DNA of 64,000 bases from NCBI GenBank assembly GCA_000320545.1, contig ADNK01002596.1, positions 116,331 through 180,330 on the forward strand. Direction: 5' to 3'. Positions within the stretch are counted from its first letter, which is position 1. Each line of letters starts with the position of its first letter. Positions 39,871-63,779 of this stretch are shown piece after piece. The position numbers and the translations under genes were made by a program. This DNA is from Bigelowiella natans CCMP2755. Taxonomy: Eukaryota > Protista > Cercozoa. The notes under the pieces were generated by a model, which saw nothing but the letters and a program-made list of their open reading frames with translations, had not been told where the DNA came from and searched no databases.

Positions 39871-39890
39871 TTGAAAACAAAATAGTATGC

Positions 39891-39929
<39 letters not shown>

Positions 39930-40095
39930 AGAGAAATAGAGAGAGAGAGCTGGAGTGCAACATTTACGTTCTGCGATGCCTTACAGAGAGAGAGCGAAGA
40001 GAGATTTACGTTCTGCGTTGCCTTACAGCTAGATTACAGTCTTCTAGTCGGTTGCGGTGAATTGTGTACTTTATTAATTTCTCGAATTAGAGATA

Positions 40096-40131
<36 letters not shown>

Positions 40132-40221
40132 ATGACGCTCACTGTTATTATTAATAAGTACGTTGAACTGTCCTCTCTTCTCGTCCTCATTTACACAGAT
40201 TTACGACAATCTAAGAATAAT

Positions 40222-41995
40222 ATGAGCATTGCGAGCGGTGGCTCCTTTGCCAATGTTGCCCCCGACGACGACGACGATATTGAAATCTTTCAGCCGGAAG
40301 GGGGGGTAAAGGGAGATCACAAAGAAAAGGGAGATAAGATACCAAAAATGAAAAATATAGAGAGAGGCTCGGCGCAAAGCAGCACACAGATAATCAAATC
40401 CAACATAACTTTCGCGGACGATCCTGCTGCTTTTGACGATGATGACAGTGACATAGTGGTGGGTATTTTGCATTTTGAAAATTTTAACAAATTGCACGAA
40501 GAAGGAAGGAAGAACACTGTTTTTTTGGAAAACAAGAATAGAAAACGAAATAGTATAAGCTCAATCCAAAACCATCTTTTCGATACACACTTTCCGAATA
40601 CTTACCATCCTTCTCATCAACATGGTAGATATTCCAACCTGGCAAGACAAATTCGACCAAGAATTCTCGCTTTGAGTTGGGACAGTCAATGGAGAACAAC
40701 GTCTCCAAAATATCAGGAGATCTCGTAGGAAACACTAGCGAGGTGTGCTGTTTCTGAAGAAGAGAGAGGGAGAGGAGGGAAATGATAAAAAGGAGAAGCG
40801 GACTCCATTGCATCTTGCTGAATATTAAACTTGTTCCTCTCTTTCTTTAGGAAGGAGAGCATTTGTTTATGACGACATGGTTTATTATTATACATATGTT
40901 TTACTCAGGAAGCCATTGAAACCCCAAAAGACACTGCTTTTAATGGTGGTGACGACGACGACGATGACGACATTGCCATATTCAATCCTGCAGATTCCTC
41001 AGTCAATAACTCTAGCAAAAGTCGACGAAGAGAGGGACTCTCAAATGATAACGACGATTTGGGGAGCGCTCATACTGATGTACGTATGTATGATGATAAG
41101 AGATATGGTCTTGTCTTCTAAGTTACAGTCTCCCCTCACAACTCGTTGAGAAATTTATTCTTCTGCTTGTTAATCCCCTTCTTAACCCCTCTTTCCTTCT
41201 CCCCCTCCTCCTCCTCTTCCTCTTCTCCATTGTTCGGCCAGATATCTGGAGAGATATATGAGTTAGAGCAGCATGGAGACGGTAGTTCTATTGACTCAAC
41301 AGGGGAGATCATGGTAATTATACAAATCTAATTAATTCGTTTATCTGCTGCAGCAGCTGTGAGATCGACGGGATGGATTTTACTATGAGACAACACATAC
41401 TAAATGAATAATAAATATACTTTGACAAGCAATGATTCAGAGCTGTGGAGATTCCATCGATGCTATCACTTACTGTTTATGTATGTGTGTGTGTGTGTGT
41501 GTGTGTGTTCGTTCCTAGGAGATGGATCCAGACGCAATAGAGAGTATGTATGATGTCTCCTATGGTGGTGTTGGTGGAGGAGAGGACTCGAAGGATTCTA
41601 AAGAAGTGCGTGATCACCACCCTACCACCTGTTATTTAATCATCATTCTTCTCTATCTTTCTGTGTATTATTTTTATTATTATCCCCTACTACGTCTGTT
41701 TGGATGCATGCATTCATACATATATCAACTATGCGATTGTATGAATCACTGATGCATGTTTTTGTAATATTGCTGATGGTGATATATGCACTCGTACTAA
41801 TTTTGTAGGACCAAGCGTCCGGCAGGAGACACGCTTTGTAATAGAATTTATTGCTGAGGAAGAAGAAGAAGAACACGACAACAAGAATATATGCTAACCT
41901 TTTACTTAGGATGATATGAGAGCCTAGATAAAATCATAGGACACACCAACACATTTCGTTAATAACATAAATTAAACTAATCTATACATATATAA

Positions 41996-42060
<65 letters not shown>

Positions 42061-43675
42061 CTGCGGATGTCTGAGAAATATACTTATTTTCCCGTAGCGT
42101 CTCCCAAGCAGATGTGCTAGCATGTGCAAAATCCATAAAGGAAAACATCCAGCAAATCGACGATTATCTGCATAAAGTATTAAAAAGATGCATGAATATT
42201 CCACGATGGCATTAAAATATTACCAACACAGAATTGTGCAAAATTATAGGACATATATCATTTGTAAATCAATTCGCTTAGAGTAAAAACATACATATAA
42301 AGTTTATATGTATCTACCAGGTCTTTAATCTGCAACCTGTGTGTCGGACATATTTGCATTGGAGGTGTGTGTGAGTGTGTGTGTGAGTGTGAGTGAGTGT
42401 GAGTGTGAGTGAGTGTGTGCGTGTGCGTGTGAGTGTGAGTGTGAGATAGTATGTGGTGATGACATTCATTTTTGCTTATTTGAGTTGTTCTGGAAGAAGT
42501 AAAGAAAGATGATATACACATCCTATGTATTCTTCATTTTGTTTGTGATGAAGTGAACTATCTGATGACTATGTATTCTTCATTTTGTGTGTGATGAAGT
42601 GAACTATCTGATGACTAATGTATTATTTGACGATGACTACGGCTACAGAAACCTTCTGCTACGAATTTGGCATGAAACCTTCGATTCGAATGGAAACTGC
42701 ACGACCAATATGTATGATTATTGCTATCTTATCTACAATGATAGTTTTTTTAATGCTGTTGACAATACACGTAGTACCAATGGTATGTTGTTGAACAAAT
42801 AGATGCTTTATTTATGTAATGGTATATTGTGAAAAGAAGTATTATTTATGTAGTGTTGGTGGTGGTGGTGGTGGTGGTGGTTTTTGTGAGACAAATTCTG
42901 AAAGGAAAAGAGGAGAAGAAGGAGGAGGAAGAGGTGGTGGTGGTGGTGGTGGTGGTGGTGGTGGTGGTGAAGGACGACGAGAAACATCTACTAGCTATCA
43001 CATTTATTCGCTGCCGTCCTCCTCCCTCCTCCTTCTCCTCCTCTTTATGATGAATTTACATTTAGATCCTACCTGCAAGAGCTCGAGGAAATAGCTATCG
43101 GTCTGGGAGAGGCACAAAGGTATGTCGGTCGTCGAGTGTACAAGATAGATAGATAGATAGATAGATGGTAGATATTTGTGGAATAAGAATAATAATAATG
43201 ATAATAATCGAGAATTAACAATATCATTATCATCATAAGATCAGCACCGCTTGCTGTTTTGGTGTAATTCGTTATCCTCCTCCTACCAAATCCTTGTCAT
43301 CGTTGGGGCGTGGAAGAGGAAGAAGAACCCCTAATACTGCTTTAAACGCTGCATATGTCGAATATTGTGTTGTTACCAGCAAATGGAGCGAAATTCTTAT
43401 CAATCTCATCAGAGAAAAATCTGGTAAGTGGTAGCTTCGTCAGAATTAATAGTAATACTGAGAAGAATTAATAGTAATACTGAGAAGTAGGAGAAGGAGA
43501 GAAAGAAGACGTAGAAGAAGAAGAAGAAGAAGAAGAAGAAGAAGAGACAGAAGAAGACAGATTGTGTTATGATACTTCAGACTACGTTACACATAAGATA
43601 CACTAATAATGATAATATAACAACAGCAATAATAATTTGCGATCATCCACATTTCTCGTCACTAACATCATAGTT

Positions 43676-43706
<31 letters not shown>

Positions 43707-44125
43707 CCACCACCTTCCAACACTTTATGAAAACAGCCCAAACAAGATCTGGAAACTCGGTTAAGAGAAAGGTGGACATACTAATTGTGTAAACAATCTT
43801 TTTCTCCCTCTTTTCTTCCTCTTCCTCCTCTTTCTTTACAAGATGCATTATTGAAATTCGTTTATCCAACTTCAAACTAAGTAGTATTTTATGTGTGGAA
43901 AATGATGATGATTTATCAGAGAGTGATAAGTGGCTTTTCACACGTGTCTCTCGATGATGACGCACATCCTGCAAAGGCAGAGTTGGCAAACCTGGAGCGC
44001 ATGTTATATGCTAATTTAAGAATCTGTGTCTCCAAAAGCGATGCAAGCGACGATCCCAACCTGCATAATGAAGACAACGAAGCTGGTTTTCTACTACTAC
44101 TTCTTCTTCATCTTCTTCTTCTTCT

Positions 44126-44157
<32 letters not shown>

Positions 44158-45454
44158 ACGTACTTGGTTGCGTGGTAGCCAGTAGTAAGTAACCGTGTTG
44201 ATGCTGTTCTTTTGTCAATCATCTTTTAATATATAGTGTATGGTGTGTGTGTCTACTCTTTACATCTTCAAATAGGCCTTTTCTGGTGGAGATTCTTCGG
44301 TGTACGAACACGAGAGGAGAAGTTGGAAGTGTTCTGCCGTGCCTTATCGTTGTATTTGAGGCATGAGTTCAACCAATTTATCGGATCTGATGAGACACTA
44401 ATACAGCTTGTAAAGCAAACAGTTGACACGGGGGTGGATACTGGGGTCAGTCAGTCAGTCAGTCAGACAGTACATAAATAAATAGGTTAAATATAATCAT
44501 CACGCACATGTTTTGCTCCTCTTACTAATTCTTTACTGAGACAAGTGAGATGAGCCAGAGAATTAAAGATTAACATTTTTATCATATGAATTTCAAACAC
44601 AGAGCGACCACAAGAAAGATGAGGGCAAGTCACACGACAATATTGTCTCCGATAATGAGTTTCGTGAATTTATTTCACGTTATGGCCCGCTCAAATCGTG
44701 CTTTAACAAGATGCGTGGTGTCTGCGTCGTCAAGGACACAAAAACAGGAAGAATCGAGGGTGCTGATTGGTTTTATCCCTACGATCGCCAGGAAACTGTG
44801 TGTCTACTCAAATTCGGTCTGGCTTCCTTCTTTTTACCAATTTTATAAAATAATAATAATAATATTAATAATAATAATAATAAGAAAAATGATAATTATT
44901 TTGAACACCTTCGATTAATTTGGCAGTTTCTTCGTTACTGTTAAAAGAAGAAGATGTAATAATAAACTGTTCATTGTTGATATTCCTAATTGTACAGGAA
45001 AACAGGGGCGAGCGTCAAGAGAGTGGGTTGCAAGGTTGGGATGGAGGCACAAGAATATGGCATTTGTCTTCAGGTGATGATGATGTTGACTATGGTGCTG
45101 CTGCTACTGTTGTGTTGTTCGTTGCCGGCATCAGCCCAGAACCACTTAGCTCAGATAATTGATCACAATATTATTTTCCTGCAAGTGGAGAAGAGAGATC
45201 AGCCATTAAATCCTAAATAAAAATACATTATTATTCTATGTTTCCTAATTTTATCTCCCAGTTACATGAACCACAAGGACACGGCACACACACCTGTTAC
45301 ACACGGATATAAACAAGAGAAGGAAAATCATTTGTACGAGTGCGAACTGCAATCGATCAAAGTTTCTGGAGTAACCATGCGCCATTTGATCCTCAACATC
45401 TGTGGCAATCAGGTAGTATCGTAGAGTATATTAAATAACATTTACACACATACA

Positions 45455-45494
<40 letters not shown>

Positions 45495-46474
45495 GAGGTG
45501 TCTTTATAAATTTCAATCAATCTCATATGCAACAATCTAGTAATTCTCACGTTATTCAATGAACGATCATGATGATTACAATGATGTACGACAGCGTTTC
45601 AAATATGAAAAGAGCAAAATCTTAACAATGATGGTGAATATGATATTAAAATAGGGAGAACGGACTCCTATATTTGGGGAGAACATGCGATTGGAGAAAA
45701 AAAAAGCGGAAGAAGAAGATAGGAAATGGAATAACTGGCTCTCTTCCCTGAAGAAGGCACATCAGCAACGGCGCAAAGTGCATGCTATCGCTGAGGGCTT
45801 TGAGGAGGTAGTAGTAGTAGGTGGTTACTAGAGCATGAGTGCGTAAGTATGAGTGAGTGAGTAGTGGTAGTGTCGTTGAAAATGCTGATAATTGATCGTA
45901 CCATTGTTGTGCGACGCTTTGTTGTTATTGTAGTTGCCTTCATGGTAATAAACATTAGCACATTATTTCCACCACGCATAATCATGTCAACCACATAGGA
46001 TCACCATAATCAGAACCGATTTCGTTGTCATCATCTTTATCATTATCGATCAACATCCAAGAGACACACCACCTTGACCACTACCACCATTACTACCACA
46101 GGTATTCGAGCTGAACACGTTCTTCGAGAAGCTACGAAGTCGTGGCAAGTCGCCCTTACTTCGAGAAAGCATGCTTGAAACAGTGGAAGGCCGCTCTCTT
46201 TTCAAATGGATGCAGATGACGTGTAATAACATCAACATCTCAGTCAAGGATCTCTATTCTTCCAGTCCTTCGACGCGACACAAGGCACTAGTGACATTAC
46301 AGCATTTGACAATGTCTGCAGGAGCTTCCTGCTCTACGCTTTCCGATAACGATCGCCACTTGCTTCAGGTTAGAAAAAGAAGAAGAAGAAGAGGAGAAAT
46401 ATGATCGACAAAAAAGAACAAAAAGCAGAAAGATAGATTGTATGTAGTTGCAGGCGCTGCAGTTCTAGTGATTC

Positions 46475-46521
<47 letters not shown>

Positions 46522-49500
46522 TGTGTGTGAGAAGGGGGGGGGGGGAGTAGAAGGACCAGATTAAACACAAATTATTATTATTACTATTGTTGTTGATGTT
46601 ATTGTTGTTGTTTCCTTTGCTTATCAGAAGCTGAATCCTTTCTCGCGTGAGGTATCATCGCGCGAGAAGGAACAACGGCAATTAATGGAGAGGAAAGGGA
46701 ACTTGAAGCACTATCAATGGGCATTCAATGATTATAAGCGAGAGGGCCAAACCGTGATCCACGAACTCGTCGATGCCGCCACCGTACTTTTGGGAACAAC
46801 GAAAAATGGGGGGGGGCCAATCAATGCACAGGCCATGCTTATCGATCACTTCCAAGTAATAATGATAAAATAATAATCATACTAATAATACTAGATGATT
46901 AACACCGACAATGAAATTTAATAGGATGGAAAATGCGTTACCTGCCTGCTACTTTATTAAACTTGTGTGTGTCTGTATCGATTCCATCAACATAGAATAA
47001 CAATAACTCATTACATATTTTATCATAACTTTTTTATCATAACTATTCACCTTTACCTTTTCCTCCACATACTTGCACATACACACTTACGAACACACAT
47101 ACAAACCTGTGTTTGTGCGCGCGAGTGTGTATCTTCCTGTCTATTCTCTACTTCGTGAACATTTACTCTTATTACCATTATCATCATCATCATCATCATC
47201 ATTTCGTTAACATTATATTGACTTCTTATTATTATCTTTTCGTGATGCATATATGATGATTCATAAAACGCAGAACGTGTTAGGATTGCTCAAATCACTG
47301 TCGATTGTGGGTGTAGCGATGCATATCACAAATGATGCCGGGGCCACGCCTATCGAGCGTGTTGTTTCATGGTTTGCAAATCATCGAGAAAAGAGCAAGT
47401 CTTCCCTCCCAATTATTAGCGTTCAGATGTTTCACTCGCTCTTCTTCACGGTGTATGAGCGCACAATCAGCGACTTTCAGTCTGTAGTTCCTTTGGCGGG
47501 AGAGACACACGCGCGCAAGCATAGCGGTATCCTCATTAAAGTTTTACGAGGAATTATTCCTCAAGGTGACATTGAGATCATTGAGCATCTGGTGAAAACC
47601 GATCGCCGACTGCGTCATATGCTACGATTCGAGACAAAAAGGGAAACAAACATCTTTTTGTCTCTCAGTATCAACCATGATAGTAGCCATGGATCTCCAG
47701 GGCTTGGAGAAGGAGCGATTTCAATGGGACATGGTGAGCAAGAAATGGTGTAGTCGTTGTTCATAATATTTATGATAATGATTCTTTCGGGTTGGTTGTT
47801 GGGCTACACCTCTTTACTCTTGGCTACTTGCTTTTTCTTACGGCATTCAATTTGCTGTTTTCTCCTTGTGTTAGTGCTGATCTCAATTCGCGTAATGTTT
47901 TCACTTCTTCTTCTTCTTCTTCTTCTTGGTGTGCTGCTGTAGGAAATGATGTGCAGTCCAGCGGTGCGGCTGGTGTGTCCTTTCTTCACTATCTGATCCA
48001 GCAAACAGCAAACCATAATCATATGGATACTCACTTTGATGCATATGGAAATGCACCTCGAATTGCGAAGCTTGTATTCTCAGAAATGCCTCCTGAGAGG
48101 AAGGGCCTTTATTGCTCACTGCCAGGGGGTGAACATGGCGACACTCCGATCCTCGCTGCAGCTCGAGCCAATCATCAACCAATGATGTATTTATTATGAT
48201 GCCACAAGTCTCTAACAATCCAACGAGTCACATGTGGATTTTGTGGATTTGTGTCTTTCCAATACAAATACTACCTCCTCTAATGATACACGAATATTAA
48301 CTTCCTTTATTACTTGCTGCGTTTGACTTCTTTACATACGTCATGAAATTTGTGTGGTGATAAGAGATTTCTTCTTCTTCTTCTTCTTCTTCTTCTTCTT
48401 CTTCATAGGAAATTTCTGCTGCACGTTGGTACCCGGCTGCGTCGTGACTTCATGGAATTCCGGCGGCACAATGATGCTGCTATTAAGGATGGTGGTGGTG
48501 GTGGAAAAAAGAATAGGTGGGGGGTGTTACAACATGTATAATATCCTTATTTATTGTCATTCATCCTTTTAACGGTGAAAAGTGCCTTCGGTTGCAATAC
48601 TCTCCACCACATTGTCGTTGTCTTAATCGCCATCATCATCATCATCATCATTATTTGCTATTACCACTACTACTACTTACTGCCATCGCTGTTGGTGGTG
48701 GTGGTAGTGCATAACCCACCACCACCATCATGGTATCGTCGTCATCATCGTCGTCGTTAACTCTTCTTCTTCTGTTGTTGATATCAAATCTACCATTAAG
48801 TTCTCCACACGGAGGAGGAGGCGGCGGAGGCGGCGGAGGGGGGGTGCTAGGGGCCCTCGGTATAGGGTCTCCAGGAAGAATGAGTTCAGGGGGGAAATCG
48901 CCTGAGTCAATGCTGCAACGCAATAGCTCACAGCTCTCTTTAAAGATGATACGATCTATGTCGCTTGTATTTCAGAAGAATGATCATGATATCATAGGCA
49001 CTCCTATCTGCGAGATGGCCGACCGGTAGAATTTCTCCTAAAATCATTTTATTGATGATTCACAATGATAGTAAGAGTGGAACGAGGAAGTAGCACTGGT
49101 GTCAGGAAAAATACTGATAAATGGATGATAATGGCGATCTTAACATTTGAACTCGCCACGTCGTTGTTGTCATCTTTTGTTTGTGCATTATTTTGTAAAT
49201 TTCTTTTTCTTACAATAAATAGATACGGCAACTGTTTACTGCACTTCTTGGCAGCAAGTTCAAAGATATCACTTCGTGAAGTCTCTACAATTCTATCGGC
49301 CTTAGATAGTGCAGGTGGATTGATATCTGCTGTAATTGCTGCTGCTACTGCTGCTGCTGAACGTGAAAGACCTCATTCATTGCTAGGGTGTTATAGCAGT
49401 AGAGAACTTCTGCTTTCAATTGTTATTATATTGGTGCTTAATACTAGGTGTTTTGCAACATCATATATTTCATGTAGCCTTGTCTCTGTCTTGATTCTAT

Positions 49501-49842
49501 TCGATGTGTTTGCTAGGGGAAGCAACCGCTGCGATGGTTGACCGCATGAATGCAAAGGGGGAGACACCTTTGTCTATCTTACTCTCTAGATATAAAGCCA
49601 TACAGTCTACGGCTTCGAACTCACAGACAATGCAAATGTCAAACGTGCAATCTATTGAGCTTGCCAATGTAACGCTGCTTCTGCTTGCAAGAGGTGCCCG
49701 AACACAAGGATTGCGCCATGATGAAATGGAAATCCTAGGTGAAATTGCAGGCTTGGCGATGCAACGGTGAGTAGGGAAATAGTAGCCCTCTTTGTGTGAT
49801 GTCGTACAAGTGTGTGTGTGTGTGTGTGCGTGTGAAAGAGAG

Positions 49843-49900
<58 letters not shown>

Positions 49901-50767
49901 TTCGAAGAGATAGAGATGTGGCATTTACGAATTACAAGTGTAACAGAAAGTGACAACATGGTTGTTATCGGCGATTGAGCAGGTGCGTGAACTATCGTTG
50001 GACCATTCTCCGCAACGCAGTGCAGTATGGCGACGACAGGCTGGTGGAACTGATACTATCGTCAAAAAGTATTCGCACATTTCCTTTCCTAAAGCATCCA
50101 CGCTTTGAGAAGCGCAAGACCAGACTTCAAAAAAGGAGGAAAGAGCATGCGCGTCGTCTTCTCCGCCAAATAACGGCGAAGCGGTACACCGCTCATTGCA
50201 TAAAACTAGTTTTTTCTTATTTTCAAATTTGACAATAACAGTCTATCCTAAAGTACATTCCTCAAAGAACTTACCTCCTCGTTCAACCTCCTTGGCCTTC
50301 CTTTCACTACCGCAATCATCTTAGATTTTCAACTATTATACAAGCGAAATCGCCGATGGGGATTGGAAGCCACCGTCCTACGACAACATTTGCGGGAGCT
50401 GAAGGGGGGAGACCAAAGATGGCATGGCCTAGTCGAAAAGGAGGAGGAGGGGGGGGGGGGGGGGGGACAGGGACGGGGACCGGGGCAGGACAAATTGGAT
50501 TGAACAGTTTACAACGATTCAATTTACAACGATTCAATTCTGACTTATTTGATCTCAATGAAAGAGGAATGAATTCGCAAAAAGCGTTAAACCTAACGCG
50601 AAGCCCATTTTTCGAGGGCATATCCGATCATACGTTAATACATGTCGCGACGTCTAGTCCACATTCTAACGCCAAGATTGTAGAGATGCTGTTTAGGCAG
50701 GATCAGGTAAAACTTAAAAACAGTCGTAGTAGTGTTGTACTTTTCTTTTGATGAAATGTATGACATT

Positions 50768-50804
<37 letters not shown>

Positions 50805-52416
50805 ACTTTCTCACTCACTCTGTTGCTGACGTCCTCCTCGCCTTACACTACTTAGGTTATTGCCGATCGCAAATTCCGTGGGCGTTTGAAAGAGCTTGTA
50901 GTGACGCCAGATGACCTTAACCGGCAGCTTCAAGCGGTGAATGCGGGCGCCTTTCATGCCAAGAAATCGTCATCACGCAAGGACAAGTCTACATTAACGC
51001 ACATCATGCTCGGAAACCACCATCATTATCACCAACCATCGCGTATCCAATCCTCACAAATGGACGAGCGAAACTTACTACGCCTTGGGTAATCAGACAT
51101 TTGCCCTCCGTTTTCAGTTGTGTGTGTGAGAGAGAGAGAGAGAGAGAGTAATTCGTGTGTATATACCTCCAAATTCATAGCTGTATTCATAAAGAAATAC
51201 TATCGTTATGTTTCTTGTTTTTTTGATTGATTAAATTGATACTAACAGGTTGAACTTAGCTGATGATGGCGAGAAGAATCCCCTGCATTACATTGCATCA
51301 AAGCAAAACACCCAGACACGCAATATTGCTAAACTTTTAGTCGAGAATAGTGTGAATATAGTACATATGGACGCCGAGGGCCTCACACCTCTGCACGTGG
51401 CGGCTAAGGCTAATCAGCTCGAAATTGTGGACTTGATGGTCAGCACGCACATGCATCTCGACATCAAGACAGGCCGTGTACAGGACGACTACGCTCTGTA
51501 AGAATAAGAAGGAGAAGAAGAAGAAGAAGAAGAAGAAAACAATGTTGTTAAATATAAACCAGCAGTGAATATGTATTACTGTAGTATTTGTCACATCATA
51601 TTATTCTCACTTATATATAGATACGCGAACGCCATGAAGCAGCTTGAGGGTTCTTCATCTCGTGTCAATGCAAAACACGACCGTACAGCTTTGTTCTTTG
51701 CTGTTGAGCAAGGAAACTGGCAGATCTGCTCACTTCTATTAGCTAGAAAAGCTCAAGTAGATGAATTCGACTCTCAGGGAAAGACCGCGCTTACTGTTGC
51801 CTTCCAGTGTCGCCATGGACGCCTAACTGATGATAAACTGTACGTGCAGCACTGTAGAAGAGAATGTGTGTAGTATTTGAATTTAGTAGTATTTGGTGTC
51901 CTTTTGGATAAGAATGCTTCGATTAGATTATAAGTTGTTTTTGGGGTTTGAGAATGATAGTTTACCCCTCCCTCTTCATCATTATCGAAAGGTACGTTGA
52001 CATTGTGGAGACGCTAGAAGTGTGGCGTGAACTAGTAGGCGACGTTCAGAGGCTTACGATGCATCAGAAGAGGACTATGGTAAAAAAATGCGAATATTGG
52101 CTTCGCATTAAGCAGCGTAATGAGCGCGAGTTCTCTGTTGCGGACCCTCTCGACAAATCCAGGCATATCATCGCCACCATTCAGCAGGTAGTACAATTTT
52201 TTGTAATTCAATTTTTGAATTATAGCATATGTGTGAGTGTGCACATAAGAGTGTGTCTGTTTGTGTGTGATTTGTTGCACAGGCTAGATATGTGTGCATA
52301 TAGTTACTTCTTTACCATGTCTTCTCGTTGTTTGAATTTCATAGAGAGATGACCACAAAATAAGGATAGCAGCACTCCTCAAGCCAAATGCTACGATCTA
52401 TCTCATATTCACAACC

Positions 52417-52450
<34 letters not shown>

Positions 52451-54843
52451 TCACTATGATGCATCCCTTTACTAACTCTCCTCCGTCAACTTGTAAGAGT
52501 AATAATAATAACAATAATACCATTGTTATTAGGCCGTTCTTCATGTAAGAGCAATTGACGAGAACTTACATTATGATAATGAAGAACGGGGAGGAGGAGA
52601 CGCAGCAGCTGAAGTAATCGGGAGTACCAATGTAACTTCTCCAGCCGACGATACTACTACTACTGCTACTACCCGAGTAACGAAACCCTTAGGTTCCAGA
52701 CCCGTTGATGCTGCAGCAGCAGCAGCAGCAGCAGCAGAAAGGGACCAGAAATATAGCAACAACAACAACAACAAGAAGAAGAATATTGGTGGTGGTAGAG
52801 CAGATGTTGGTAGTAGTGGTGGCTTGAAACTACCGACGAGTCCTAAGCGGGCAAACAAAATGAGGCAGCAGCAGCAGCAGCAGCACATCCATAGCCGAAC
52901 TGGTGCTACTGCAGTATTGGGGTCCTCAATGAGGGGCTTTGAAGATAATGACCAGTAAGTTAAACAACATCTTATACAATACAGGCAACAAAATGCCAGT
53001 GGAAGCAGCAGCAGCAACATTAATCTTTAGCAAGAATAGCAACAACAGTAACAACATCTATCAAGAGATATAAACTTTTACCTCATTGTTGGTGATGAAA
53101 ATAATGCGACAGAACATTCTATGATTATGCTGTCTAGCGTATTCAAATGTTTGTCAATGTTTCGTGCCCAAATATTGAAAATTTAGAGAATTTTTGCAAT
53201 TTCAAATTACTCTTTATGCTACTGTTGTTAGTGTAATTGTTATTATAATTATCATCACTACTACTACTGCTACTACTACTAATTTATTTTATATTATAAA
53301 TATGGAAAGAATCTCTTGAGTATGTTCTTTTACAGATTCATGGAAGATTTATACGAAACACTGCTCGAGGCTGAAAATGCAATTACAGCCGAGAAGTCGC
53401 GTATACAACCGATTAAAGCGAATTTGAAGGTGAAGTGTAAAGGCGGCTACGGTGTATTTCATCCTTCTTGCCACCATCGTTAGAATTATCACCATAAATC
53501 TTCGAGCTACTTTAATCTACTATCAATCTAATACTAGTATGTGCAACAAATAATAAATTGTGGGTGGCTTAGGTGACAATCGATGTGCTCCTCAATCATG
53601 GCGCCGACATTGTGTTGGCATTCCGACTAGTTACGATGGATGTTTCCAACTGCATCGACATCGACGGCGAGGTGGCTGCTATCTCCCTTTCTTTCCTCCC
53701 CCCCCCCCCTTCTCCTCCTCTCTCTCTATTTATATGTCTATATATCTCCCTTCGAAATCAAAACCATAAGAAGAGGTACAGAAGAAGATAGAAGGATTAG
53801 GAAATGTGAGAGAGAGAGAGAGAATGAGATCTTCGAATGGAGGTAGAAGAAGAGTGGTGAGAGGAGTGGTTCTGCTGCTGGTTGTGTCGTCGTTGTGTTG
53901 TGTGTACTACTACAACAACATGTTGTGGTCGATAGTTTGAGGCAATAAACTCCAAGTTTAAAGCAATAGAAAAGGAGGCAGCAGAGTCCTACAAACTCAT
54001 TAATGATGCTGACATCTCCACCTTAGCGCGCACGTAAGACTGAATGCATTTTGAGAAAATAGAGAAAAGTAACAAAGAAGATATAGTTGCCTATGATAAT
54101 TAATATTATATTTATGACACATATCATACTAATCCTACTACCATCATTGTTGTAGTGGCTAAATAGTGAAGAAACGTAAGCTCAATAGAATACTTAACCA
54201 TATTCATTGCCAACTCCCACTCGAAGGTACACAAACCTGCAAAAGGGACATCGCGGTTTTACGCAAAGGGCCAACAATAGAAATAATACTAATGCCAACA
54301 ACGATCCTGACACCATGTCGCCGCTGGAATGGAACCATAGCCAGCGGTCGCCACTTATCCGAGAGGAACCTAATTCACCGCAGTTGGGTACCACTACTCA
54401 TGCTGGCGAGGTATGCCAATCGAAGAAGAAGAAGAAGAAGAAGAGAAAGACCTTATGTTGTGAATTAGAAATAATTAACACTGTTGTCACTGCTGCTGCT
54501 GCTACTACTGATGCAGCTACTACAAATCATGGCAGCAAGTGATTAACAATGGCGATGGTCATGATCAATCAATATATCTGGTACTATTAGGTGAAGCTCA
54601 TAGAACGCCTGATGAAGAACAAACAACACCAGGAGGATGTCGACGCGGTTGTGACTGCTATACAGGAGCGTCGGGAGGCAGTTTTCCGTACCAAGTTAGA
54701 CGACGACAGACAACATGCATGTGCTTCATTGATTGTAGCAGTAATTGTAATAGTAGTTCACATAATATACACATCAATATATTCAAATGCACCCGTCTAT
54801 CGCCCACGAACATAAACATAATGTGATTAAAATATATATAGGC

Positions 54844-54884
<41 letters not shown>

Positions 54885-55234
54885 CTAATATTGTTGTGTA
54901 CATCGAACTCAATAAAGCATCATATGAACAGATACAACCAAATCGTGATTACTGAGAAGTATAAAGCAACTATTGAGAAGGCAAAGTGGGGTGAGTTGTG
55001 GTGGTACTTGATCTTTCTCTGCCTTACGACGTATGTCGGAATTCACACCTCAAGTCGGAACAATAAGGCAAGCTTTTTAATGCGCGAAGGAGGTTCGTAT
55101 GTACGTACGTACTACTACATAATCACGACTACAACGCCATAAACGAAAGGAATTGAACGACGCAAATAGTACATGTTTATGTGACTATTGATCATTGCCC
55201 ATTCCTATCTTCATCGATTTACGATATTATATAA

Positions 55235-55267
<33 letters not shown>

Positions 55268-55307
55268 GTAATTATCACACATTACTCAACATATTTACTC
55301 AACCAAC

Positions 55308-55374
<67 letters not shown>

Positions 55375-55676
55375 TGTGTGTCTGTGTGTCTGTGTACATA
55401 TAACGTCATCCTTACACAGCGGTCTCCACACTGGTTGAGGACGAATTTTCAGAGCAAATTTCGATCTTAAAGCGCAATTTTCTTGAGATCGATTCAGTGG
55501 ACGAGTTTTATATGTGGGCAAAGGGGCCCTTCCTTGATGTATTCTACCCTGAACAACGTGACCAGTACTACGACGGTAACACGCTCAAGGACAGGACACC
55601 GACATATTTGGGGCAGGGTCGAGTGGTAGGCCTACCAAGATGGCGGCAGCAAAGGTGCTGGTGCTGGTGGTGCTTA

Positions 55677-55709
<33 letters not shown>

Positions 55710-58163
55710 AGACTATAACAAAACATACATCTATCCCAGTCGCCCTCACAGTAGCAAACATTATGGAAGCAAGTGAATATATTTGATGTTTCTTTCTTTC
55801 GAGTCTCCTAACAGAAGGCTCTGTTAATAATTTGTATCTCAACAACTAATTCTCCCTCATTCATTTATTTTTACATTAGATGGGATATCGTGGATTGTGA
55901 ATTGTATCCAAGCTATAAGGAGCTCGGAGACGTTTGTACGAAGGAAATTGATCGTTGGCCTTGGATTCCAGTCATGGAACATCACGGTTCAACCGAAATG
56001 TTTGGCAACAATTGGTTATACGAAGATCCTCCAGGGCCGTTTTCGTACTCATGGGCATCAGGCACTAGCCGGTGGTATCCAGGGGGGGGGTTCTCACAGG
56101 ACTTTCCCGACGTAACGAATACGACAATGGTGTATGAAGAGTCCACTAATTCAATGGTAAGCGCGGCGCGCGTGGCAGCCGCTGCTTTGGTCACGGAGCT
56201 CATGAATAAGACCTGGATTGACTCGATGACGCGCGTTGTCTTCGTCGAGTTCAACGTCTACAATGCCAATGAGGACCTGTGGTTAATAGGGCGCATGAAT
56301 GTTGAGTTTCCAAACACTGGAGGGATAAAGTCGAGTGCCAGTCTCGAAGTTCTCACAGGTATTCAAGTATTTGTTTTGTACGAGTTTTGTCCACCGATTA
56401 ATTGCAATATTATCTTAAATCTAATTGGGTTATTATGTGTTGTTATATTTGGGGCTGCTGTGTGTTGGGTGAAATACTATCAAACAAACAGAAATCTCAT
56501 GGCCATTCAAGCCCGAGTCTATCCATATTTGGGTACTAAAATTCGTGGTGCTTGTGTTCGCTCTTTGGAACTTTGTTCAATGGTGCGTGAACGCATGCTT
56601 CCTCAACGTTGGTGTGCGGCGAAGCAGGAATCTCAACATCGATAGCTTCTACAACGCTGTTGGAATGTTCATCAACGCTCTCTGGGCGCTAGTCATCCTT
56701 TCCCAGATTGGAATGATTCTCGCGACTAATTCGATTGATTTTGCGACTCAAAATAGCTTTATTGATATGACAGAGATCTCTTTCCTCAGTCAAGGGTAGA
56801 TGATAGAGTGAAGTAGTAGTGAGGTGGATGGTTAGCTTGGTTCTGCTATTGATGCTAATGATGATGCCGATAATGATGCTGACGGTGCTGCTGTGGCTTC
56901 TTTTCCTGATTACTACAGCATTTATTCATCATCACACCTTCCCATCATTAGCAACTAAAACTCTACTACTACCACTACTACTCTCCCTCACATAGGTACA
57001 CAAACTTCTTCTCGATGTTGCTCTTCTTACTATGGGTTTGTGCAGTTTTCTCAATGTCTTCTGTGTGTGTCTTGTGTGTGTGTGTATGTGTGTGCGGAGT
57101 ATTTAAGTTATCATCATTCTTCCTCCTTCGTGATTTATAATTATGCATCGTTGACGATGATCGATCAATCATAATGTCATTGATTGACGAGTAGTAACAA
57201 AATATACTGCTGCTGCTCTCTCCCTCTCTCTCTCTTTCAGGTAAAGCTGACAGACCACTGGTCTGTCCAACGGGAAATCTCGCGACTTGTTGTGATGATT
57301 ATGGTGCTGCTCCATGAGCTGCAGTATCTCCTCCTGTTCATGCTGATAATGTGGATTGCCTTCGCAACAGGCATCTTTGTCGCGTACGGCTACAGGTGGG
57401 AGGGTAGAGAAGAGAAGAAAAGCGAGGCGGGGGAAGAAATAGCGAGGGGGGTGGTGGAGAGAGAAAATGGACAAGATAGACTAAGAAAGAGATTTTTAGT
57501 CTTCGTCCTCGTCGTTCGACAGTGCACAGGAAAATATAGCAGCATCAACGCAGCATCTCTATTCGTCGTTTAGTTTCACTGCGATTCCTTCTATCATTTA
57601 GGAATAATCAGCACTCCCTATGGATTACTTCGCTATTAACAACAATTTCAAATGCATTTAATGGCGAGGATCTCCTCGATCAGCGTGATCAGTCTCCATT
57701 TATGGGTACAATCTATGGAGTCGCTGCACTCATCCTTGTCCTTCTTGTCCTCATGAATCTCGTCATCGCTATCCTTACTGCCGCGTACGAGAATGCAAGA
57801 GAGGAGGTCGGCGACGCTTTCTGGTATTAAGTTTGGAAAGTTCAGAAATGAGTACAAGGAAAGATGATCAGAGACGTGAGGAATATGTAGTAGTCATATA
57901 GTTCTCTTTCAAATAAGAGCACAATCTTTATAATTAAGTGCTCAACATTATCATTTTTATCATCGTTTTGTTTCAACCTTGGCTTTAGGGCGGGACATCA
58001 ATACCGACTTATACAGCAGTACACTAAAACGATGACAAGTAGTATTATTCATACGACGATGTTTATATAAGTGTACAGATAGTCATATAGTGGTGAGAGC
58101 TACGAGATATCATTTAGATACAAAATTAATTTTATATACATGTATATGTGTACATATTATATA

Positions 58164-58197
<34 letters not shown>

Positions 58198-58209
58198 GCT
58201 GTCTGTGAA

Positions 58210-58241
<32 letters not shown>

Positions 58242-59008
58242 AAATGGAAAGTATCTTAAAGCTAAATATGGGGAGACAAGGAGTGCATGTGTAATTTTGG
58301 CTGTTATCAATAAGGACCACCATGTTTATTTGGTGCTTCATTACCTCTTCCTCCTTAGGTACCAGCAAAGATAAAAATCATCAGCTACAGCAAGTCAAGG
58401 TTAGTGTCTACAAGGGGTAGACGTAGTTGTGCGCGCTGCAGAAATCTTGGAAAGATAGACGTGTTGTTTACAACCTATTTTCAGTGCCACTTGTGTCTGT
58501 GTGTTTGGGGGGGGGGGAGCGCAGTGACACAGGAATTTCAATTTGATCATTTTCATTCCTGTCCTTCTTATCAGAAAATGAAATTACGCTGCAACGAATG
58601 CTTACACAAAGTAGGAACAATCTACTTGACAACATCCTTGTGATTACTGCTAAGTATTCATTTTCCGTACGTATACCTCCTCTCGAGCTCTGACATTGTC
58701 ATCCTTCTTTGTTTGAGCAGCTTGTTCTTTCTCACCCATTGTTTGTGTCAACGGACTGTTTAACTCGTTGTGCTTTAGCTATATAATCTGGGGTGTACAT
58801 CGCGTATGAATTCACTGAATAATATTCCTCTGTCTGTCTTCTCAGGTTGTACAGTTAATTGGTCTTGTCATCTCTTCAATGTGGTCAACATGCTGCGGTT
58901 GCTGTCAGCCTACGGACACTTTTATGTAAGTAGTAAAATGATGGCTGACTGATAACGAGAAAATAGAAGAGGAAGATGATGAAGTGGGCTGTATGTTTGT
59001 GTGTGTGT

Positions 59009-59052
<44 letters not shown>

Positions 59053-60032
59053 AAGTCACTGCGGATGAAAGCCAGGATAGCCAGCTTTTGTATCATAAAT
59101 CTAAATATGCTCTACAAATCTTTCAAGTAGTGGCGTCGTTGAATTAATTGTTAGGAATTCGGACGATGATGATAGTCCCGGGGAAGGTAGAACCTCATAA
59201 TTAATTAATTTCTTGTCGTGATCATTATGATCTGTCATATGCAAAGATCTTCTCCGATTGTACGAAGATAGTTTCATGTTTGTTTTACGTTTTTTCACAG
59301 AAAACGATGATGAGAGAGGGGAAATCGATTTTGCCAAGAAGCGAAGAAGAAAGTAAAGAAAGAATATAAACATAACATAAGAGCAGAAATGTATTTCCAC
59401 TTTGTACATATATTATTTTTACCATATTTGCAAGATTCTTAGCATTTATAATATCATGTAGTTAAGTAGGAGAGGTGTAAAGCAGCATGGGAGTATTGCA
59501 TGTTTGGTGGTCATTCTCAGTTGCTTCTCTTACGCAAATCTTCTGCTATAATATGCAAAATAAAACTTCGACAAGGTCCGCCCTTGAGTTTACCTGCAGC
59601 TGACATTAATGCTTTTATGGGATCCCATTTTAAAATTACTTGTTCAGTTCGATCTTGGATGGTCTGAAGAGTACTGAGGATATAGATATAGAATACGTCG
59701 ACAAATTCAAATCGGTAATAATAGTTGTTCTAGCGTTTTCTATCCATCAGCTATAAAATAGCCTGATCAATGCATGTATAACATCCATTAGCCGACGTTT
59801 CTATGGGTGTATGTTCTCTTTCTCTCTCTCTCTCTTTCTCTTTCTCTTTCTCTTAGTTCGTGTGTGTATGATTTGCTATCATGCATCAAAAGAATGTTGT
59901 TTAGATAAAATTTACGGATTTACGATGCTGTTTGTTCGTCATCAGGGAATTTATGCGTCACCACATAATAGTGGGAAGGAAACAAAAAGGACATTTCATA
60001 CTTTCCGAGCAGAGGAAACCAAGGAAAGGTAG
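40222..60032 (+). CDS. Giant multidomain cation channel: acidic N-terminus - helical region - EF-like linker + SH2 - ankyrin repeats - polycystin-2 (TRPP/PKD2-like) channel
   Basis: More than 40 GT-AG exons join in consistent phase from ATG 40222 through the channel and TRP-box-like helix (~58020). The last C-terminal exons to stop 60030-60032 are less certain. See sub-features. Confidence 0.8.
44275..45412 (+). other. EF-hand-like linker + SH2 domain (Cbl-TKB/STAT/Dictyostelium Shk-like) within the giant gene
   Basis: EAGLFWWRFFG...LEVFCRALSLYL...KQTVD...DNIVSDNEFREFISRYGPL...DWFYPYDRQETVCLLKFG (exon ends 44816) / KQGRASREWVARLGWRHKNMAFVFS (44998-45073) / YMNHKDTAHTPV...LYEC...TMRHLILNIC (45262-45412). 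The betaB Arg position is conserved in WVAR. Confidence 0.65.
46628..52050 (+). other. Ankyrin-repeat region within the giant gene
   Basis: EGQTVIHELV, NDAGATPIERV, HGDTPILAAARANHQPMMKFLL, YGNCLLHFLAA, NAKGETPLSILL, DGEKNPLHYIASK, DAEGLTPLHVAAKANQLEIVDLMV, HDRTALFFAVEQGNWQICSLLL, DSQGKTALTVA. Confidence 0.9.
54932..58020 (+). other. Polycystin-2-like (PKD_channel, TOP domain + 6TM) region within the giant gene
   Basis: S1 ELWWYLIFLCL. TOP domain: FLEIDSVDEFYMWAKGPFLDVFY, VVGLPRWRQQR, YPGGGF, WIDSMTRVVFVEFNVYNANEDLW, VEFPNTGG. S4 LFLLWVKL; S5 YLLLFMLIMWIAFA; pore TISNAFNGED; S6 LMNLVIAILTAAYE; post-S6 DAFWAGHQYRLI. Confidence 0.92.
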
Positions 60033-60049
60033 AAGACAAATTTGAAATC

Positions 60050-63443: not shown

Positions 63444-63779
63444 AGGCTAGGTACGCGTAACGCAGCCCAATTTGCATGCATGTACATCGATGTTTCTCTT
63501 CACACTGCATTGAGAATGCCTTCTCAATGCACATGACGCTTAACGCCCATCTCTGGTCTTGAACGCAAGCGGTCCATGTCGATCTAGATGTTGATTTGCA
63601 AAACAGTCGCATGCATTTGTCTCAAAGTTGCCGCTGTGCGAGCTTTTTGTGCTCCATTTTCATTGCATCCACCAAACGCAAATGAGAAGCCAGGTTGACG
63701 ACCAACCAAAACTGTTCATTGCACATAGCCGTGATCACGATCTTTCGCACACATGACATCATGGAAGAGGGAATCGTGA

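What the first reader, a model, noticed from the sequence alone, without database searches (positions are those of the whole stretch)
40222..60032. One gene appears to fuse an SH2 module, ankyrin repeats and a full polycystin-2 (TRPP) channel
Seen in sequence: exon phases are continuous from the SH2-like exons (44275-45412) through about 9-10 ankyrin repeats (46628-52050), a helical/low-complexity linker (52532-54700) and into S1, TOP domain, S2-S6 and a TRP-box-like helix. For example ...AVFRTK/YNQIVITEK...WGELWWYLIF. Established: ankyrin arrays typify TRPA/TRPN/TRPV/TRPC, whereas characterised TRPP/PKD2 channels (defined by the TOP domain) lack them. I know of no characterised ion channel carrying its own SH2 domain. 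Inference: this could be a cation channel gated or scaffolded by phosphotyrosine, and may be an undescribed TRP architecture of roughly 2500-3000 aa (my estimate).
Basis: partly seen in the sequence, partly recalled or inferred. Interest (0 to 1): 0.92.

Follow-up and report, generated by a model that had tools for sequence, protein, structure and literature searches.

The report
Polycystin channel with built-in SH2 module
One 20-kb gene of the alga Bigelowiella natans encodes a polycystin-2-type cation channel whose very large cytoplasmic front end carries ankyrin repeats and a Cbl-like EF-hand plus SH2 module; I found no described ion channel with this combination.

Summary
The window is Bigelowiella natans nuclear DNA. 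The locus 39679-60032 (+) is one gene, JGI model Bigna1 80520 (2553 aa).

I revised the model with help from homologues: 55 GT-AG exons and 2735 aa. The revision restores the S1 helix, the first SH2 helix, one ankyrin exon and the true 3' end.

Pfam and PDB profiles confirm ankyrin repeats and a full PKD2/PKD2L1-type core: S1, TOP domain and S2-S6 (E 1.5e-58).

Relatives show the same collinear layout as an uninterrupted ORF. One is an intronless 7.8-kb genomic ORF flanked by other genes. Another is a 2548-aa transcript ORF. So the fusion is not a gene-prediction artefact.

The SH2 part gets no Pfam hit. The evidence for it is indirect:
- An AlphaFold model of a distant family member (pLDDT 82) matches Cbl TKB, EF-hand plus SH2, at Z 13.2.
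- The same model then matches about 40 ordinary SH2 domains.
- The two phosphate-binding arginines and the betaD histidine are conserved in B. natans.

For B. natans itself the SH2 call rests on transitive homology. Regulation by phosphotyrosine remains an inference. I rate this a new variant of a known kind.

The parts
39679..60032 (+). Whole gene. The revised model has 55 GT-AG exons, a CDS of 8208 nt and 2735 aa. The JGI model Bigna1 80520 has 51 exons and 2553 aa, spanning 39679-59356.
   Evidence: P0001 threads exactly onto the window. The revisions keep one open frame with a single terminal stop. The final junction is corrected to 59714/59946 from the sequence.
40199..41079 (+). Acidic N-terminal region, about 20% Asp plus Glu. 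It carries three DDDDxIxIF(Q/N)P motifs at aa 55, 113 and 174.
   Evidence: Motif scan. The same motif occurs 3-4 times in each of L001, L002 and P0155.
42098..44085 (+). Helical region upstream of the EF-hand (aa about 277-410). It may correspond to the Cbl four-helix bundle.
   Evidence: The first AF2 model has four helices at pLDDT 63-89. The fold search gave only generic helical bundles, Z below 10, so this is inconclusive.
44276..44816 (+). EF-hand-like half of the TKB-like module plus SH2 helix alphaA. Exons 44276-44445 and 44603-44816. Motifs: FWWRFFG; SHDNIVSDNEFREFISRYGPL; ADWFYPYDRQETVCLLKF.
   Evidence: Alignments A2 and A5. The extension to 44816 is supported by P0003 at 80% identity, and by P0155 and L002. 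EF-hand proteins match this half: AtCBL2 at Z 8.2 and in the PDB profile searches.
44998..45412 (+). Rest of the SH2-like domain. Exons 44998-45073 and 45262-45412. Contains betaB WVARLGW (Arg at betaB5), betaC MAFVFSY, betaD HTPVTH and alphaB TMRHLIL.
   Evidence: residue conservation; register against Src SH2; hhalign of the B. natans-clade SH2 half against the P0028-clade SH2 half, E 2.4e-4; fold of the homologue.
46628..52187 (+). Ankyrin-repeat region. Four to five canonical repeats lie at 51249-51839. About six degenerate repeats lie upstream, including the exon 49983-50183 that JGI missed (WTILRNAVQYGDDRLVELIL).
   Evidence: Pfam Ank families on exon pieces and on P0001 residues 1416-1573. 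PDB ankyrin-R/B and TRPA1 ankyrin domains match at E down to 7e-26. The missed exon is 71-90% identical to three homologues and is in frame. The degenerate repeats were counted by eye only.
52533..54694 (+). Low-complexity and helical linker, followed by the pre-S1 helix (ends ...QERREAVFRTK).
   Evidence: No Pfam family. Only the exons 53336-53671 and 54591-54694 are conserved in homologues.
54932..55092 (+). Exon encoding S1 (WGELWWYLIFLCLTTYVGI). The JGI model truncates it at 54990.
   Evidence: P0002, P0003 and P0004 match 54930-55094 at 51-76% identity. Alignment A6 shows a 34-aa gap only in P0001.
55420..56358 (+). TOP / polycystin domain between S1 and S2. Exons 55420-55654 and 55880-56358.
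   Evidence: Pfam Polycystin_dom, E 6e-14 on the exon and 4e-19 on P0001. Intron 56359-56491 is confirmed by collinear homologues.
56492..57823 (+). S2-S3 (56492-56795), S4 (56996-57035), S4-S5 linker and S5 (57241-57395), pore helices, filter FNGED and S6 (57602-57823).
   Evidence: Pfam PKD_channel on residues 2255-2457. Profile A6 against PDB matches PKD2L1 at 1.5e-58 and polycystin-2 at 6.5e-56 over S1-S6. F-x-G is invariant and an acidic residue follows it in all seven sequences. Hydropathy peaks.
57989..58038 (+). Conserved post-S6 helix (AFW|AGHQYRLIQQYTKTMT).
   Evidence: W, A and Q are invariant across seven family members. Matched by P0002, P0004 and P0155.
58359..60032 (+). C-terminal tail exons: 58359-58399, 58575-58610 (KMKLRCNECLHK), 58846-58925 (hydrophobic, Cys-rich), 59155-59186, 59301-59352, 59648-59714 (EYVDKFKS) and 59946-60032 (GIYASP...KER, then stop).
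   Evidence: Local alignments to the tails of P0002, P0004 and P0155 score z 4.3-7.8 against shuffles. Splice enumeration leaves one open path. Exons 59155-59186 and 58359-58399 come from the ab initio model only.

Best explanation
Window 39679-60032 (+) is a single nuclear gene of the chlorarachniophyte Bigelowiella natans, with about 55 exons.

The product is a subunit of about 2700 aa of a polycystin-2 (TRPP)-type cation channel. By analogy with PKD2 and PKD2L1 it is presumably a tetramer with an acidic, Ca2+-permeable filter.

The channel core is ordinary: S1, a luminal or extracellular TOP domain, S2-S6, the filter F-N-G-E-D and a conserved post-S6 helix. What sets the protein apart is a soluble N-terminus of about 2070 aa, which should be cytoplasmic. 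In order, it contains:
- an acidic region with repeated DDDDxIxIFxP motifs;
- a helical segment;
- an EF-hand-like domain packed against an SH2 domain, the arrangement found in the Cbl tyrosine-kinase-binding domain;
- about ten ankyrin repeats, four or five of them canonical;
- a low-complexity linker.

Shown here: the exon structure, the domain identities, and conservation of the whole order in at least six other sequences.

Inferred mechanism: the SH2 pocket keeps Arg alphaA2, Arg betaB5 and His betaD4. It would dock a phosphorylated ligand, most likely phosphotyrosine. The ankyrin solenoid would serve as a rigid scaffold or tether. Together they would couple channel localisation, assembly or opening to a phosphorylation signal. 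In some family members the EF-hand loop is canonical and could add Ca2+ feedback.
For: Identity of the locus.

Single gene:
- P0155 is an intronless 2599-aa ORF in genomic contig L005, flanked by unrelated genes.
- P0003 is one 2548-aa ORF on transcript contig L001.
- L002 covers P0001 residues 3-2491 collinearly.
- P0028, P0156 and L003 also carry the module together with Ank, with or without a detected PKD part.

Channel: Pfam and the PDB profile search, PKD2L1 at E 1.5e-58.

Ankyrin repeats.

SH2 and EF-hand:
- The B. natans-clade HMM finds P0028 at E 4.5e-18 across the EF-hand and the start of the SH2.
- The AF2 model of P0028:215-450 has pLDDT 82 and pTM 0.79.
- The top 50 Foldseek hits are all Cbl TKB, E 2e-6 to 1e-4.
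- VIA-align gives Cbl-b Z 13.2, rmsd 3.7 A, 165 residues over Cbl 173-343.
- In the search that does not rely on Foldseek, Cbl TKBD is first (Z 12.1), followed by about 40 SH2 domains at Z 7-10, with EF-hand proteins on model residues 1-84.
- In the family-profile search of PDB sequences, 24 of 29 hits are SH2 domains (Src E 0.017), in the W...R...FLVR...H register.
- The pocket residues are conserved in all members.

No hydrophobic segment reaches the transmembrane threshold before residue 2358, and S1 itself (residue 2075) falls below that threshold.
Against: No Pfam SH2 or Cbl_N family hits any member, even at E up to 10.

A profile made only from the B. natans clade finds no SH2 in the PDB.

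The only AF2 model of a B. natans-clade sequence had pLDDT of about 30 in this region.

hhalign restricted to the SH2 halves gives only 44% probability.

So for B. natans itself the SH2 call depends on transitive homology.

The EF loop of B. natans has lost the position-1 Asp.

No transcript of B. natans itself was examined. The 5' third of the gene (39679-43771) rests on an ab initio model plus about 31% identity to L002 over P0001 residues 3-796.

Binding to phosphotyrosine and any effect on gating are untested. Whether B. natans has tyrosine kinases was not established.
Confidence: 0.72

Rival explanations
1. The architecture is real, but the EF-hand plus SH2 module no longer reads phosphotyrosine. 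It would act as a rigid structural or protein-docking domain. Alternatively it would bind phosphoserine or phosphothreonine, or acidic peptides, as the Spt6 SH2 domains do with the RNA polymerase II linker.
For: The B. natans-clade sequence is too divergent for any SH2 profile. Good structural neighbours include Spt6 SH2 (Z 8.9-9.4) and the Trichomonas IBP39 C-domain (Z 9.7-11), which is not a phosphotyrosine reader. By my own knowledge, conventional tyrosine kinases are not known from Rhizaria; the literature searches found nothing on this.
Against: Arg alphaA2, Arg betaB5 and His betaD4 are kept in all seven members across deep divergence. That pattern is what one expects of a working phosphate pocket.
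Confidence: 0.2
2. The locus holds two or three adjacent genes (SH2-like, ankyrin, channel) that ab initio prediction merged in B. natans.
For: The B. natans model is fgenesh ab initio and contains at least five errors. No B. natans transcript was examined.
Against: The same order occurs as one uninterrupted ORF in an intron-poor genome, flanked by other genes, and in a transcript contig. Exon phases stay open across all 54 junctions. No stand-alone homologue of the module was found.
Confidence: 0.04
3. The SH2 resemblance is an artefact. The AlphaFold model of P0028 imposed a common fold on a shallow 8-sequence alignment, and the B. natans region is an unrelated alpha/beta domain.
For: The alignment is shallow. 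The PDB profile E-values are marginal, 0.017 to 1. The B. natans-clade model is poor.
Against: Four of the five models agree, with mean pLDDT 78-82. The sequence profile independently finds SH2 domains in the correct register, and EF-hand proteins on the neighbouring part. P0156 carries a literal FLVR motif and a canonical EF loop. The module sits at the same place in the same architecture in all members.
Confidence: 0.04

Closest known systems
Polycystin-2 / PKD2L1 (TRPP channels)
   Same: S1, TOP (polycystin) domain, S2-S6, pore helices and a glycine plus acidic filter. The family profile matches PKD2L1 and PKD2 over S1-S6 at E about 1e-58 to 1e-56. Pfam finds Polycystin_dom and PKD_channel.
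   Different: The N-terminus is about 2070 aa and carries an EF-hand plus SH2 module and ankyrin repeats. Pfam found none of the C-terminal EF-hand or coiled-coil of PKD2. The tail has its own motifs (KLxCNEC, a Cys-rich hydrophobic stretch, DKFKxG). The filter reads F-N-G-E-D, whereas PKD2 has L-G-D (from my own knowledge).
Cbl tyrosine-kinase-binding (TKB) domain
   Same: An EF-hand domain packed against an SH2 domain, followed by a helix. Best structural match: Z 13.2, rmsd 3.7 A, 165 residues, Cbl-b 173-343. By eye, the sequence entering the EF-hand resembles Cbl (FWWRFFG against Cbl FWRKAFG, the latter from memory).
   Different: There is no RING and no Pfam Cbl_N, Cbl_N2 or Cbl_N3 hit. 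The four-helix bundle is not demonstrated. The family keeps the alphaA2 arginine, which Cbl lacks (from my own knowledge). The module is attached to an ion channel and not to an E3 ligase.
Ankyrin-bearing TRP channels (TRPA1, NOMPC/TRPN, TRPV, TRPC)
   Same: A long cytoplasmic N-terminal ankyrin array ahead of a six-helix TRP-type channel. The canonical repeats match the ankyrin domains of TRPA1 and NOMPC.
   Different: The transmembrane core is TRPP, a group 2 channel with a luminal TOP domain. TRPV5/6 and TRPM match only at E about 1e-5. [quoted passage not shown] This protein has both.
STAT linker-SH2 and plant STAT-type linker-SH2 proteins (from my own knowledge; not tested)
   Same: An EF-hand-like linker domain directly precedes an SH2 domain. 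This group includes non-metazoan examples.
   Different: No STAT chain appeared in the top 50 of any fold search. There is no DNA-binding or coiled-coil domain.

Membership tests
TRPP / polycystin-2-like channels | Six-helix channel core recognised by PKD_channel, with closest solved relatives PKD2 and PKD2L1 | tested here: met
   Pfam PKD_channel E 6e-10 on P0001. Profile A6 against PDB: PKD2L1 1.5e-58 and PKD2 6.5e-56 over S1-S6; TRPV and TRPM only about 1e-5.
TRPP / polycystin-2-like channels | TOP / polycystin domain inserted between S1 and S2 | tested here: met
   Pfam Polycystin_dom, P0001 residues 2010-2224, E 4e-19. It lies between S1 (54932-55092) and S2 (56492 onward).
TRPP / polycystin-2-like channels | Cation-selective pore with an acidic filter; tetrameric assembly | not testable with these tools
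   F-x-G is invariant and an Asp or Glu follows it in all seven sequences. Conductance and stoichiometry need experiments.
SH2 domain | alphaA, central beta sheet, alphaB fold | tested here: met
   Met for the family member P0028. AF2 model residues 88-223 align to STAP-1, Spt6, Grb7/10/14, PLCgamma, Syk and ZAP-70 SH2 domains at Z 7-10, rmsd 2.1-3.3 A. For B. natans this holds only by homology; its own clade's model was poor.
SH2 domain | Phosphate-binding arginine betaB5 (FLVR motif), plus Arg alphaA2 and His betaD4 | tested here: met
   B. natans has DRQET, WVARLG and HTPVTH. P0156 has FLVRPG and P0028 has FLFRHG. All three positions are conserved in every member. The register against Src (R155, R175 and H201, numbering from my own knowledge) is.
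SH2 domain | Match to the Pfam SH2 profile (PF00017) | tested here: not met
   No hit at E up to 10 on exon pieces, P0001, P0003, P0028, P0155 or L002. The one weak SH2 hit (E 0.13) lies at 50856-51089 inside the ankyrin region and looks like chance.
SH2 domain | Binds phosphotyrosine peptides | not testable with these tools
   Needs the recombinant module and peptide binding assays.
Cbl family (TKB-RING E3 ligases) | Contiguous EF-hand plus SH2 supradomain | tested here: met
   Cbl-b and c-Cbl TKB at Z 12-13 over the EF-hand and SH2 (Cbl-b residues 173-343, c-Cbl residues 180-351). All of the top 50 Foldseek hits are Cbl.
Cbl family (TKB-RING E3 ligases) | N-terminal four-helix bundle of the TKB | tested here: inconclusive
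   Four helices are predicted upstream at pLDDT 63-89, but the fold search gives only generic bundles.
Cbl family (TKB-RING E3 ligases) | Linker helix plus RING finger; Pfam Cbl_N, Cbl_N2 and Cbl_N3 | tested here: not met
   No RING or Cbl_N family in P0001, P0003, P0004, P0155 or P0156. This is not a Cbl family member.
Ankyrin-repeat TRP channels (TRPA/TRPN/TRPV/TRPC) | Group 1 transmembrane core without a TOP domain | tested here: not met
   The core is TRPP with a TOP domain. Only the ankyrin array is shared.

The most novel reading that the evidence does not exclude
The channel would be a self-contained phosphorylation-gated Ca2+ channel. Its N-terminal SH2 would bind a phosphorylated tyrosine in a partner, or in its own or a neighbouring subunit's conserved C-terminal motif DKFK(S/T)G(I/A)Y(A)(S/T)P. 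That motif resembles Cbl-TKB ligands. Binding would move the ankyrin arm and open or close the pore. This would put SH2-based phosphotyrosine signalling, wired directly to an ion channel, in Rhizaria, far outside animals and amoebozoans. It would also place the EF-hand plus SH2 supradomain of Cbl and STAT earlier than the split of these lineages.
Probability: 0.15. Interest if true: 0.9.

Novelty: new variant of a known kind. Interest (0 to 1): 0.72.

Why it matters
To my knowledge, TRPP and TRPML channels (group 2) are defined by a luminal domain and have short, simple cytoplasmic ends, while ankyrin arrays are a group 1 trait. This conserved family breaks that division.

It also adds a phospho-ligand reader module that I know from no characterised ion channel, and the literature searches found none.

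It places a Cbl-type EF-hand plus SH2 supradomain in Rhizaria and in several unidentified protist lineages. That bears on when SH2-based signalling and the Cbl and STAT 'linker-SH2' unit arose.

Finally, Pfam and InterPro-style annotation cannot see the module. Part of the reason is that the public gene model splices out its first helix.

Tried and rejected
- Pfam on 30 stop-to-stop exon pieces confirmed only Ank, Polycystin_dom and a weak Ion_trans, and no SH2.
- Pfam at E up to 10 on the module of P0003, L002, P0028 and P0155 found nothing.
- PDB sequence searches with A1, with P0028 alone and with the B. natans-clade-only profile A7 found no SH2.
- The first AlphaFold job (P0155:200-600, 5 sequences) gave pLDDT 46 and was unusable for the SH2 part. 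Its helical N-terminus gave only generic bundle matches.
- A search for short or stand-alone homologues of the module found none.
- The first metagenome scan found none and the second found one locus, L003.
- I considered that 56359-56447 encodes S2, because P0004 and P0155 seemed to align through it. I rejected this. Alignment A6 shows no extra segment in any homologue, and reading through runs into a stop. It is a T-rich intron.
- A full depth-first search of the 3' exons timed out. I replaced it with targeted enumeration.
- Literature searches for SH2 or Cbl in Rhizaria or Bigelowiella, for ankyrin-bearing polycystins and for tyrosine kinases in B. natans found nothing relevant. Liu et al. 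2011 is not held.
- The scan's notes held nothing more on this gene.

Full report
WHAT THE LOCUS IS

A 195-aa piece of the large TOP-domain exon (55896-56480) was searched against 1.84 billion proteins. It returned a 2553-aa protein at 99% identity (P0001). The collection names it EukProt Bigelowiella natans P018691, which is JGI Bigna1 80520, an fgenesh ab initio model.

P0001 threads exactly onto 51 GT-AG exons between 39679 and 59353 on the + strand. Pfam on P0001 gives ankyrin families (residues 1416-1573), Polycystin_dom (2010-2224, E 4e-19) and PKD_channel (2255-2457, E 6e-10). It gives no SH2.

CHECK OF THE OBSERVATION

The junction AVFRTK|YNQIVITEK is exon 54591-54694 joined to the exon starting at 54932.

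The JGI model spliced it out, but three homologues match 54930-55094 at 51-76% identity, and only P0001 has a 34-aa gap there.

THE REVISED GENE MODEL

Guided by homologues, I corrected the model as follows:
- Exon 44603-44759 extends to 44816. This adds 19 aa and restores ADWFYPYDRQETVCLLKF.
- A missed in-frame exon lies at 49983-50183. It adds 67 aa, is an ankyrin-like repeat, and is 71-90% identical to P0003, P0004 and P0155.
- The S1 exon extends to 55092.
- A missed 36-nt exon lies at 58575-58610 (KMKLRCNECLHK).
- The JGI stop at 59354 lies inside a GTAAAG donor. The real 3' end is 59301-59352, 59648-59714 and 59946-60032. It reads ...RRRNSILDGL...EYVDKFKS|GIYASP...KER-stop and parallels the tails of P0002 and P0003.

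The revised model has 55 exons, all GT-AG, and 2735 aa with one terminal stop. The first exons (MEAKEYAWNAMVQNLPLF) resemble the N-terminus of P0155 (MSTMDPWVAAIQNVPVF), but I judged this by eye only. A 39-nt exon (45595-45633) followed by a 21-nt intron remains doubtful.

ONE GENE OR SEVERAL?

No B. natans transcript was available, so the test is comparative.
- P0003 (2548 aa, 50-96% identical per exon) is one continuous ORF on a 9.3-kb, GC-rich transcript-like contig (L001). It is collinear with the window from 43914 to 57824.
- L002, another transcript-like contig, covers P0001 residues 3-2491 in order. It has a short run of N at one point.
- P0155 (2599 aa) is an uninterrupted 7.8-kb ORF on genomic contig L005. 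It sits between a DOMON/cytochrome b561 gene and a gene on the other strand.
- P0028 (with its next ORF), P0156 and the partial L003 carry the same order in more distant organisms.

The merged-genes rival is therefore very unlikely.

THE SH2 QUESTION

Sequence profiles fail. No Pfam SH2 or Cbl family is found at E up to 10 on any member. The JGI model also lacks the first SH2 helix.

By eye, the region 44276-45412 looked like the EF-hand plus SH2 part of the Cbl TKB domain.

An HMM of the B. natans clade finds the distant member P0028 at E 4.5e-18, across the EF-hand and into the SH2. P0028 and P0156 look much more canonical (WFHFVERSEAERLL...FLFRHG and WYEVIDRKSATEKL...FLVRPG).

Family profiles that include them hit mostly SH2 domains in PDB sequences. 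Twenty-four of 29 hits are SH2 domains (Src E 0.017), in the W...R...FLVR...H register. An EF-hand protein (AtCBL2) hits the neighbouring part.

AlphaFold on P0028:215-450 with the 8-row alignment A5 gave pLDDT 82 and pTM 0.79. The fold searches gave:
- Foldseek: the top 50 are all Cbl TKB structures, E 2e-6 to 1e-4.
- VIA-align: Cbl-b Z 13.2, rmsd 3.7 A, 165 residues, Cbl 173-343, which is the EF-hand plus SH2.
- The search of 48,161 representative chains that does not rely on Foldseek: Cbl TKBD first (Z 12.1), then about 40 different SH2 domains (Z 7-10) on model residues 88-223, and EF-hand proteins on residues 1-84.

In alignment A5, Arg alphaA2, Arg betaB5 and His betaD4 are conserved in every member, including B. 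natans (DRQET, WVARLG, HTPVTH).

Caveats:
- The one AlphaFold run on a B. natans-clade sequence was poor.
- A clade-only profile finds no SH2.
- hhalign on the SH2 halves alone gives 44% probability, E 2.4e-4.

For B. natans itself the assignment is therefore transitive, though strongly supported by position and by the conserved residues.

The EF loop is canonical in P0156 (DGNADGSVQVQE) and P0155 (DQDSDGVVSEEE). It has Gly at position 1 in B. natans.

A four-helix bundle upstream, as in Cbl, is possible but not shown.

ANKYRIN REPEATS AND CHANNEL

Pfam and PDB searches support four to five canonical repeats at 51249-51839. One of those units is the recovered exon at 49983-50183.

The channel profile matches PKD2L1 and polycystin-2 across S1-S6 at E about 1e-58. 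PKD1-type channels and group 1 TRPs are far behind.

The pore has an invariant F-x-G followed by an acidic residue. S6 and a post-S6 helix with the motif (F/Y)WAxHQY are highly conserved.

No segment upstream of S2 (residue 2358) reaches the hydropathy threshold used. S1 itself (residue 2075) falls below it, so the scan is not sensitive to weaker helices. If the topology is that of PKD2, the whole N-terminus is cytoplasmic.

HOW IT MOST LIKELY WORKS

This section is inference. The protein would form a tetrameric cation channel that is probably Ca2+-permeable. Its cytoplasmic arm would combine a phospho-ligand reader (SH2, buttressed by an EF-hand as in Cbl) with an ankyrin scaffold. Localisation, clustering or gating would then depend on a phosphorylated partner.

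The main rival is that the module is a structural domain or a reader of something other than phosphotyrosine. The Spt6 SH2 domains and the Trichomonas IBP39 C-domain are good structural neighbours.

COMPARISON AND NOVELTY

The core is a bona fide TRPP member. The SH2 fold and pocket are present, but the Pfam profile test fails. The protein is not a Cbl family member, because it has no RING and no Cbl_N families. It is not a group 1 TRP.

[quoted passage not shown] This family has both kinds.

Automatic annotation already records ankyrin plus polycystin on such proteins. A second lineage, P0039/P0151 (3131 aa), has Ank plus PKD without a detectable module.

I found no paper describing ankyrin-bearing polycystins, or any ion channel with an SH2 domain. 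I rate it a new variant of a known kind, with the EF-hand plus SH2 module as the new element.

Noticed in passing
window 40199-41079 (P0001 aa 55, 113, 174); also L001, L002 and P0155 N-termini: An acidic motif is repeated 3-4 times in every orthologue: DDDDxIxIF(D/N/Q)P, or IEVID / IQVVD / VEIIS in P0155. It lies in an N-terminus that is about 20% Asp plus Glu. It looks like SUMO-interaction motifs, or like extended peptides that could occupy an ankyrin groove. Function is unknown.
   Followed up: partly
window 44760-44816, 49983-50183, 54991-55092, 58575-58610, 59353-60032: The public JGI/EukProt model Bigna1 80520 has at least five errors. It lacks the first SH2 helix, an ankyrin exon and the S1 transmembrane helix. 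It skips a conserved CNEC exon. It stops early inside a GTAAAG donor. These errors help explain why domain databases see neither the SH2 nor a complete channel.
   Followed up: yes
window 59648-59714 and 59946-60032: The conserved C-terminal motif is EYVDKFKS|GIYASP. P0003 has DKFKTGAYTP...TGAYSP, and P0002 has Phe in place of Tyr. The G-x-Y-(S/T)-P tyrosine context recalls Cbl-TKB ligands (from my own knowledge). It could be an internal ligand for the SH2.
   Followed up: no
window 58846-58925: A hydrophobic stretch is followed by a cysteine cluster (LIGLVISSMWSTCCGCCQP). It is conserved in P0155 (z 7.8), and by eye in P0002 and P0003. It looks like a palmitoylation-type membrane anchor in the tail.
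   Followed up: partly
window 60000-60499 and 63500-63999: TpA is strongly depleted just downstream of the gene's stop: observed/expected 0.36 and 0.29, against 0.5-1.25 in the other 500-nt bins between 57000 and 63999 (about 0.7-0.8 in most). The region is rich in CATG and GCATGC. This fits the TpA-erasure notes that first-stage readers made elsewhere in this genome.
   Followed up: partly
window 50856-51089: A weak Pfam SH2 hit (E 0.13, 12.8 bits) lies inside the ankyrin region. It is below any threshold and sits in a segment with no SH2-like conservation, so I treat it as chance.
   Followed up: partly
L004 260-9655 (P0151/P0039, NCBI GCA_977009605.1): A separate lineage of intronless 3131-aa proteins has ankyrin repeats, Polycystin_dom, PKD_channel and a YVC1_C-like tail. 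The EF-hand plus SH2 module is not detectable (HMM E above 1). Ankyrin-polycystin fusions are therefore broader than the SH2-bearing family.
   Followed up: partly
window 45595-45654: The JGI model uses a 39-nt exon followed by a 21-nt GT-AG intron that removes an in-frame stop. Homologues have no matching insertion. Skipping the exon (one intron, 45413-45654) keeps the frame and fits P0003 better.
   Followed up: partly
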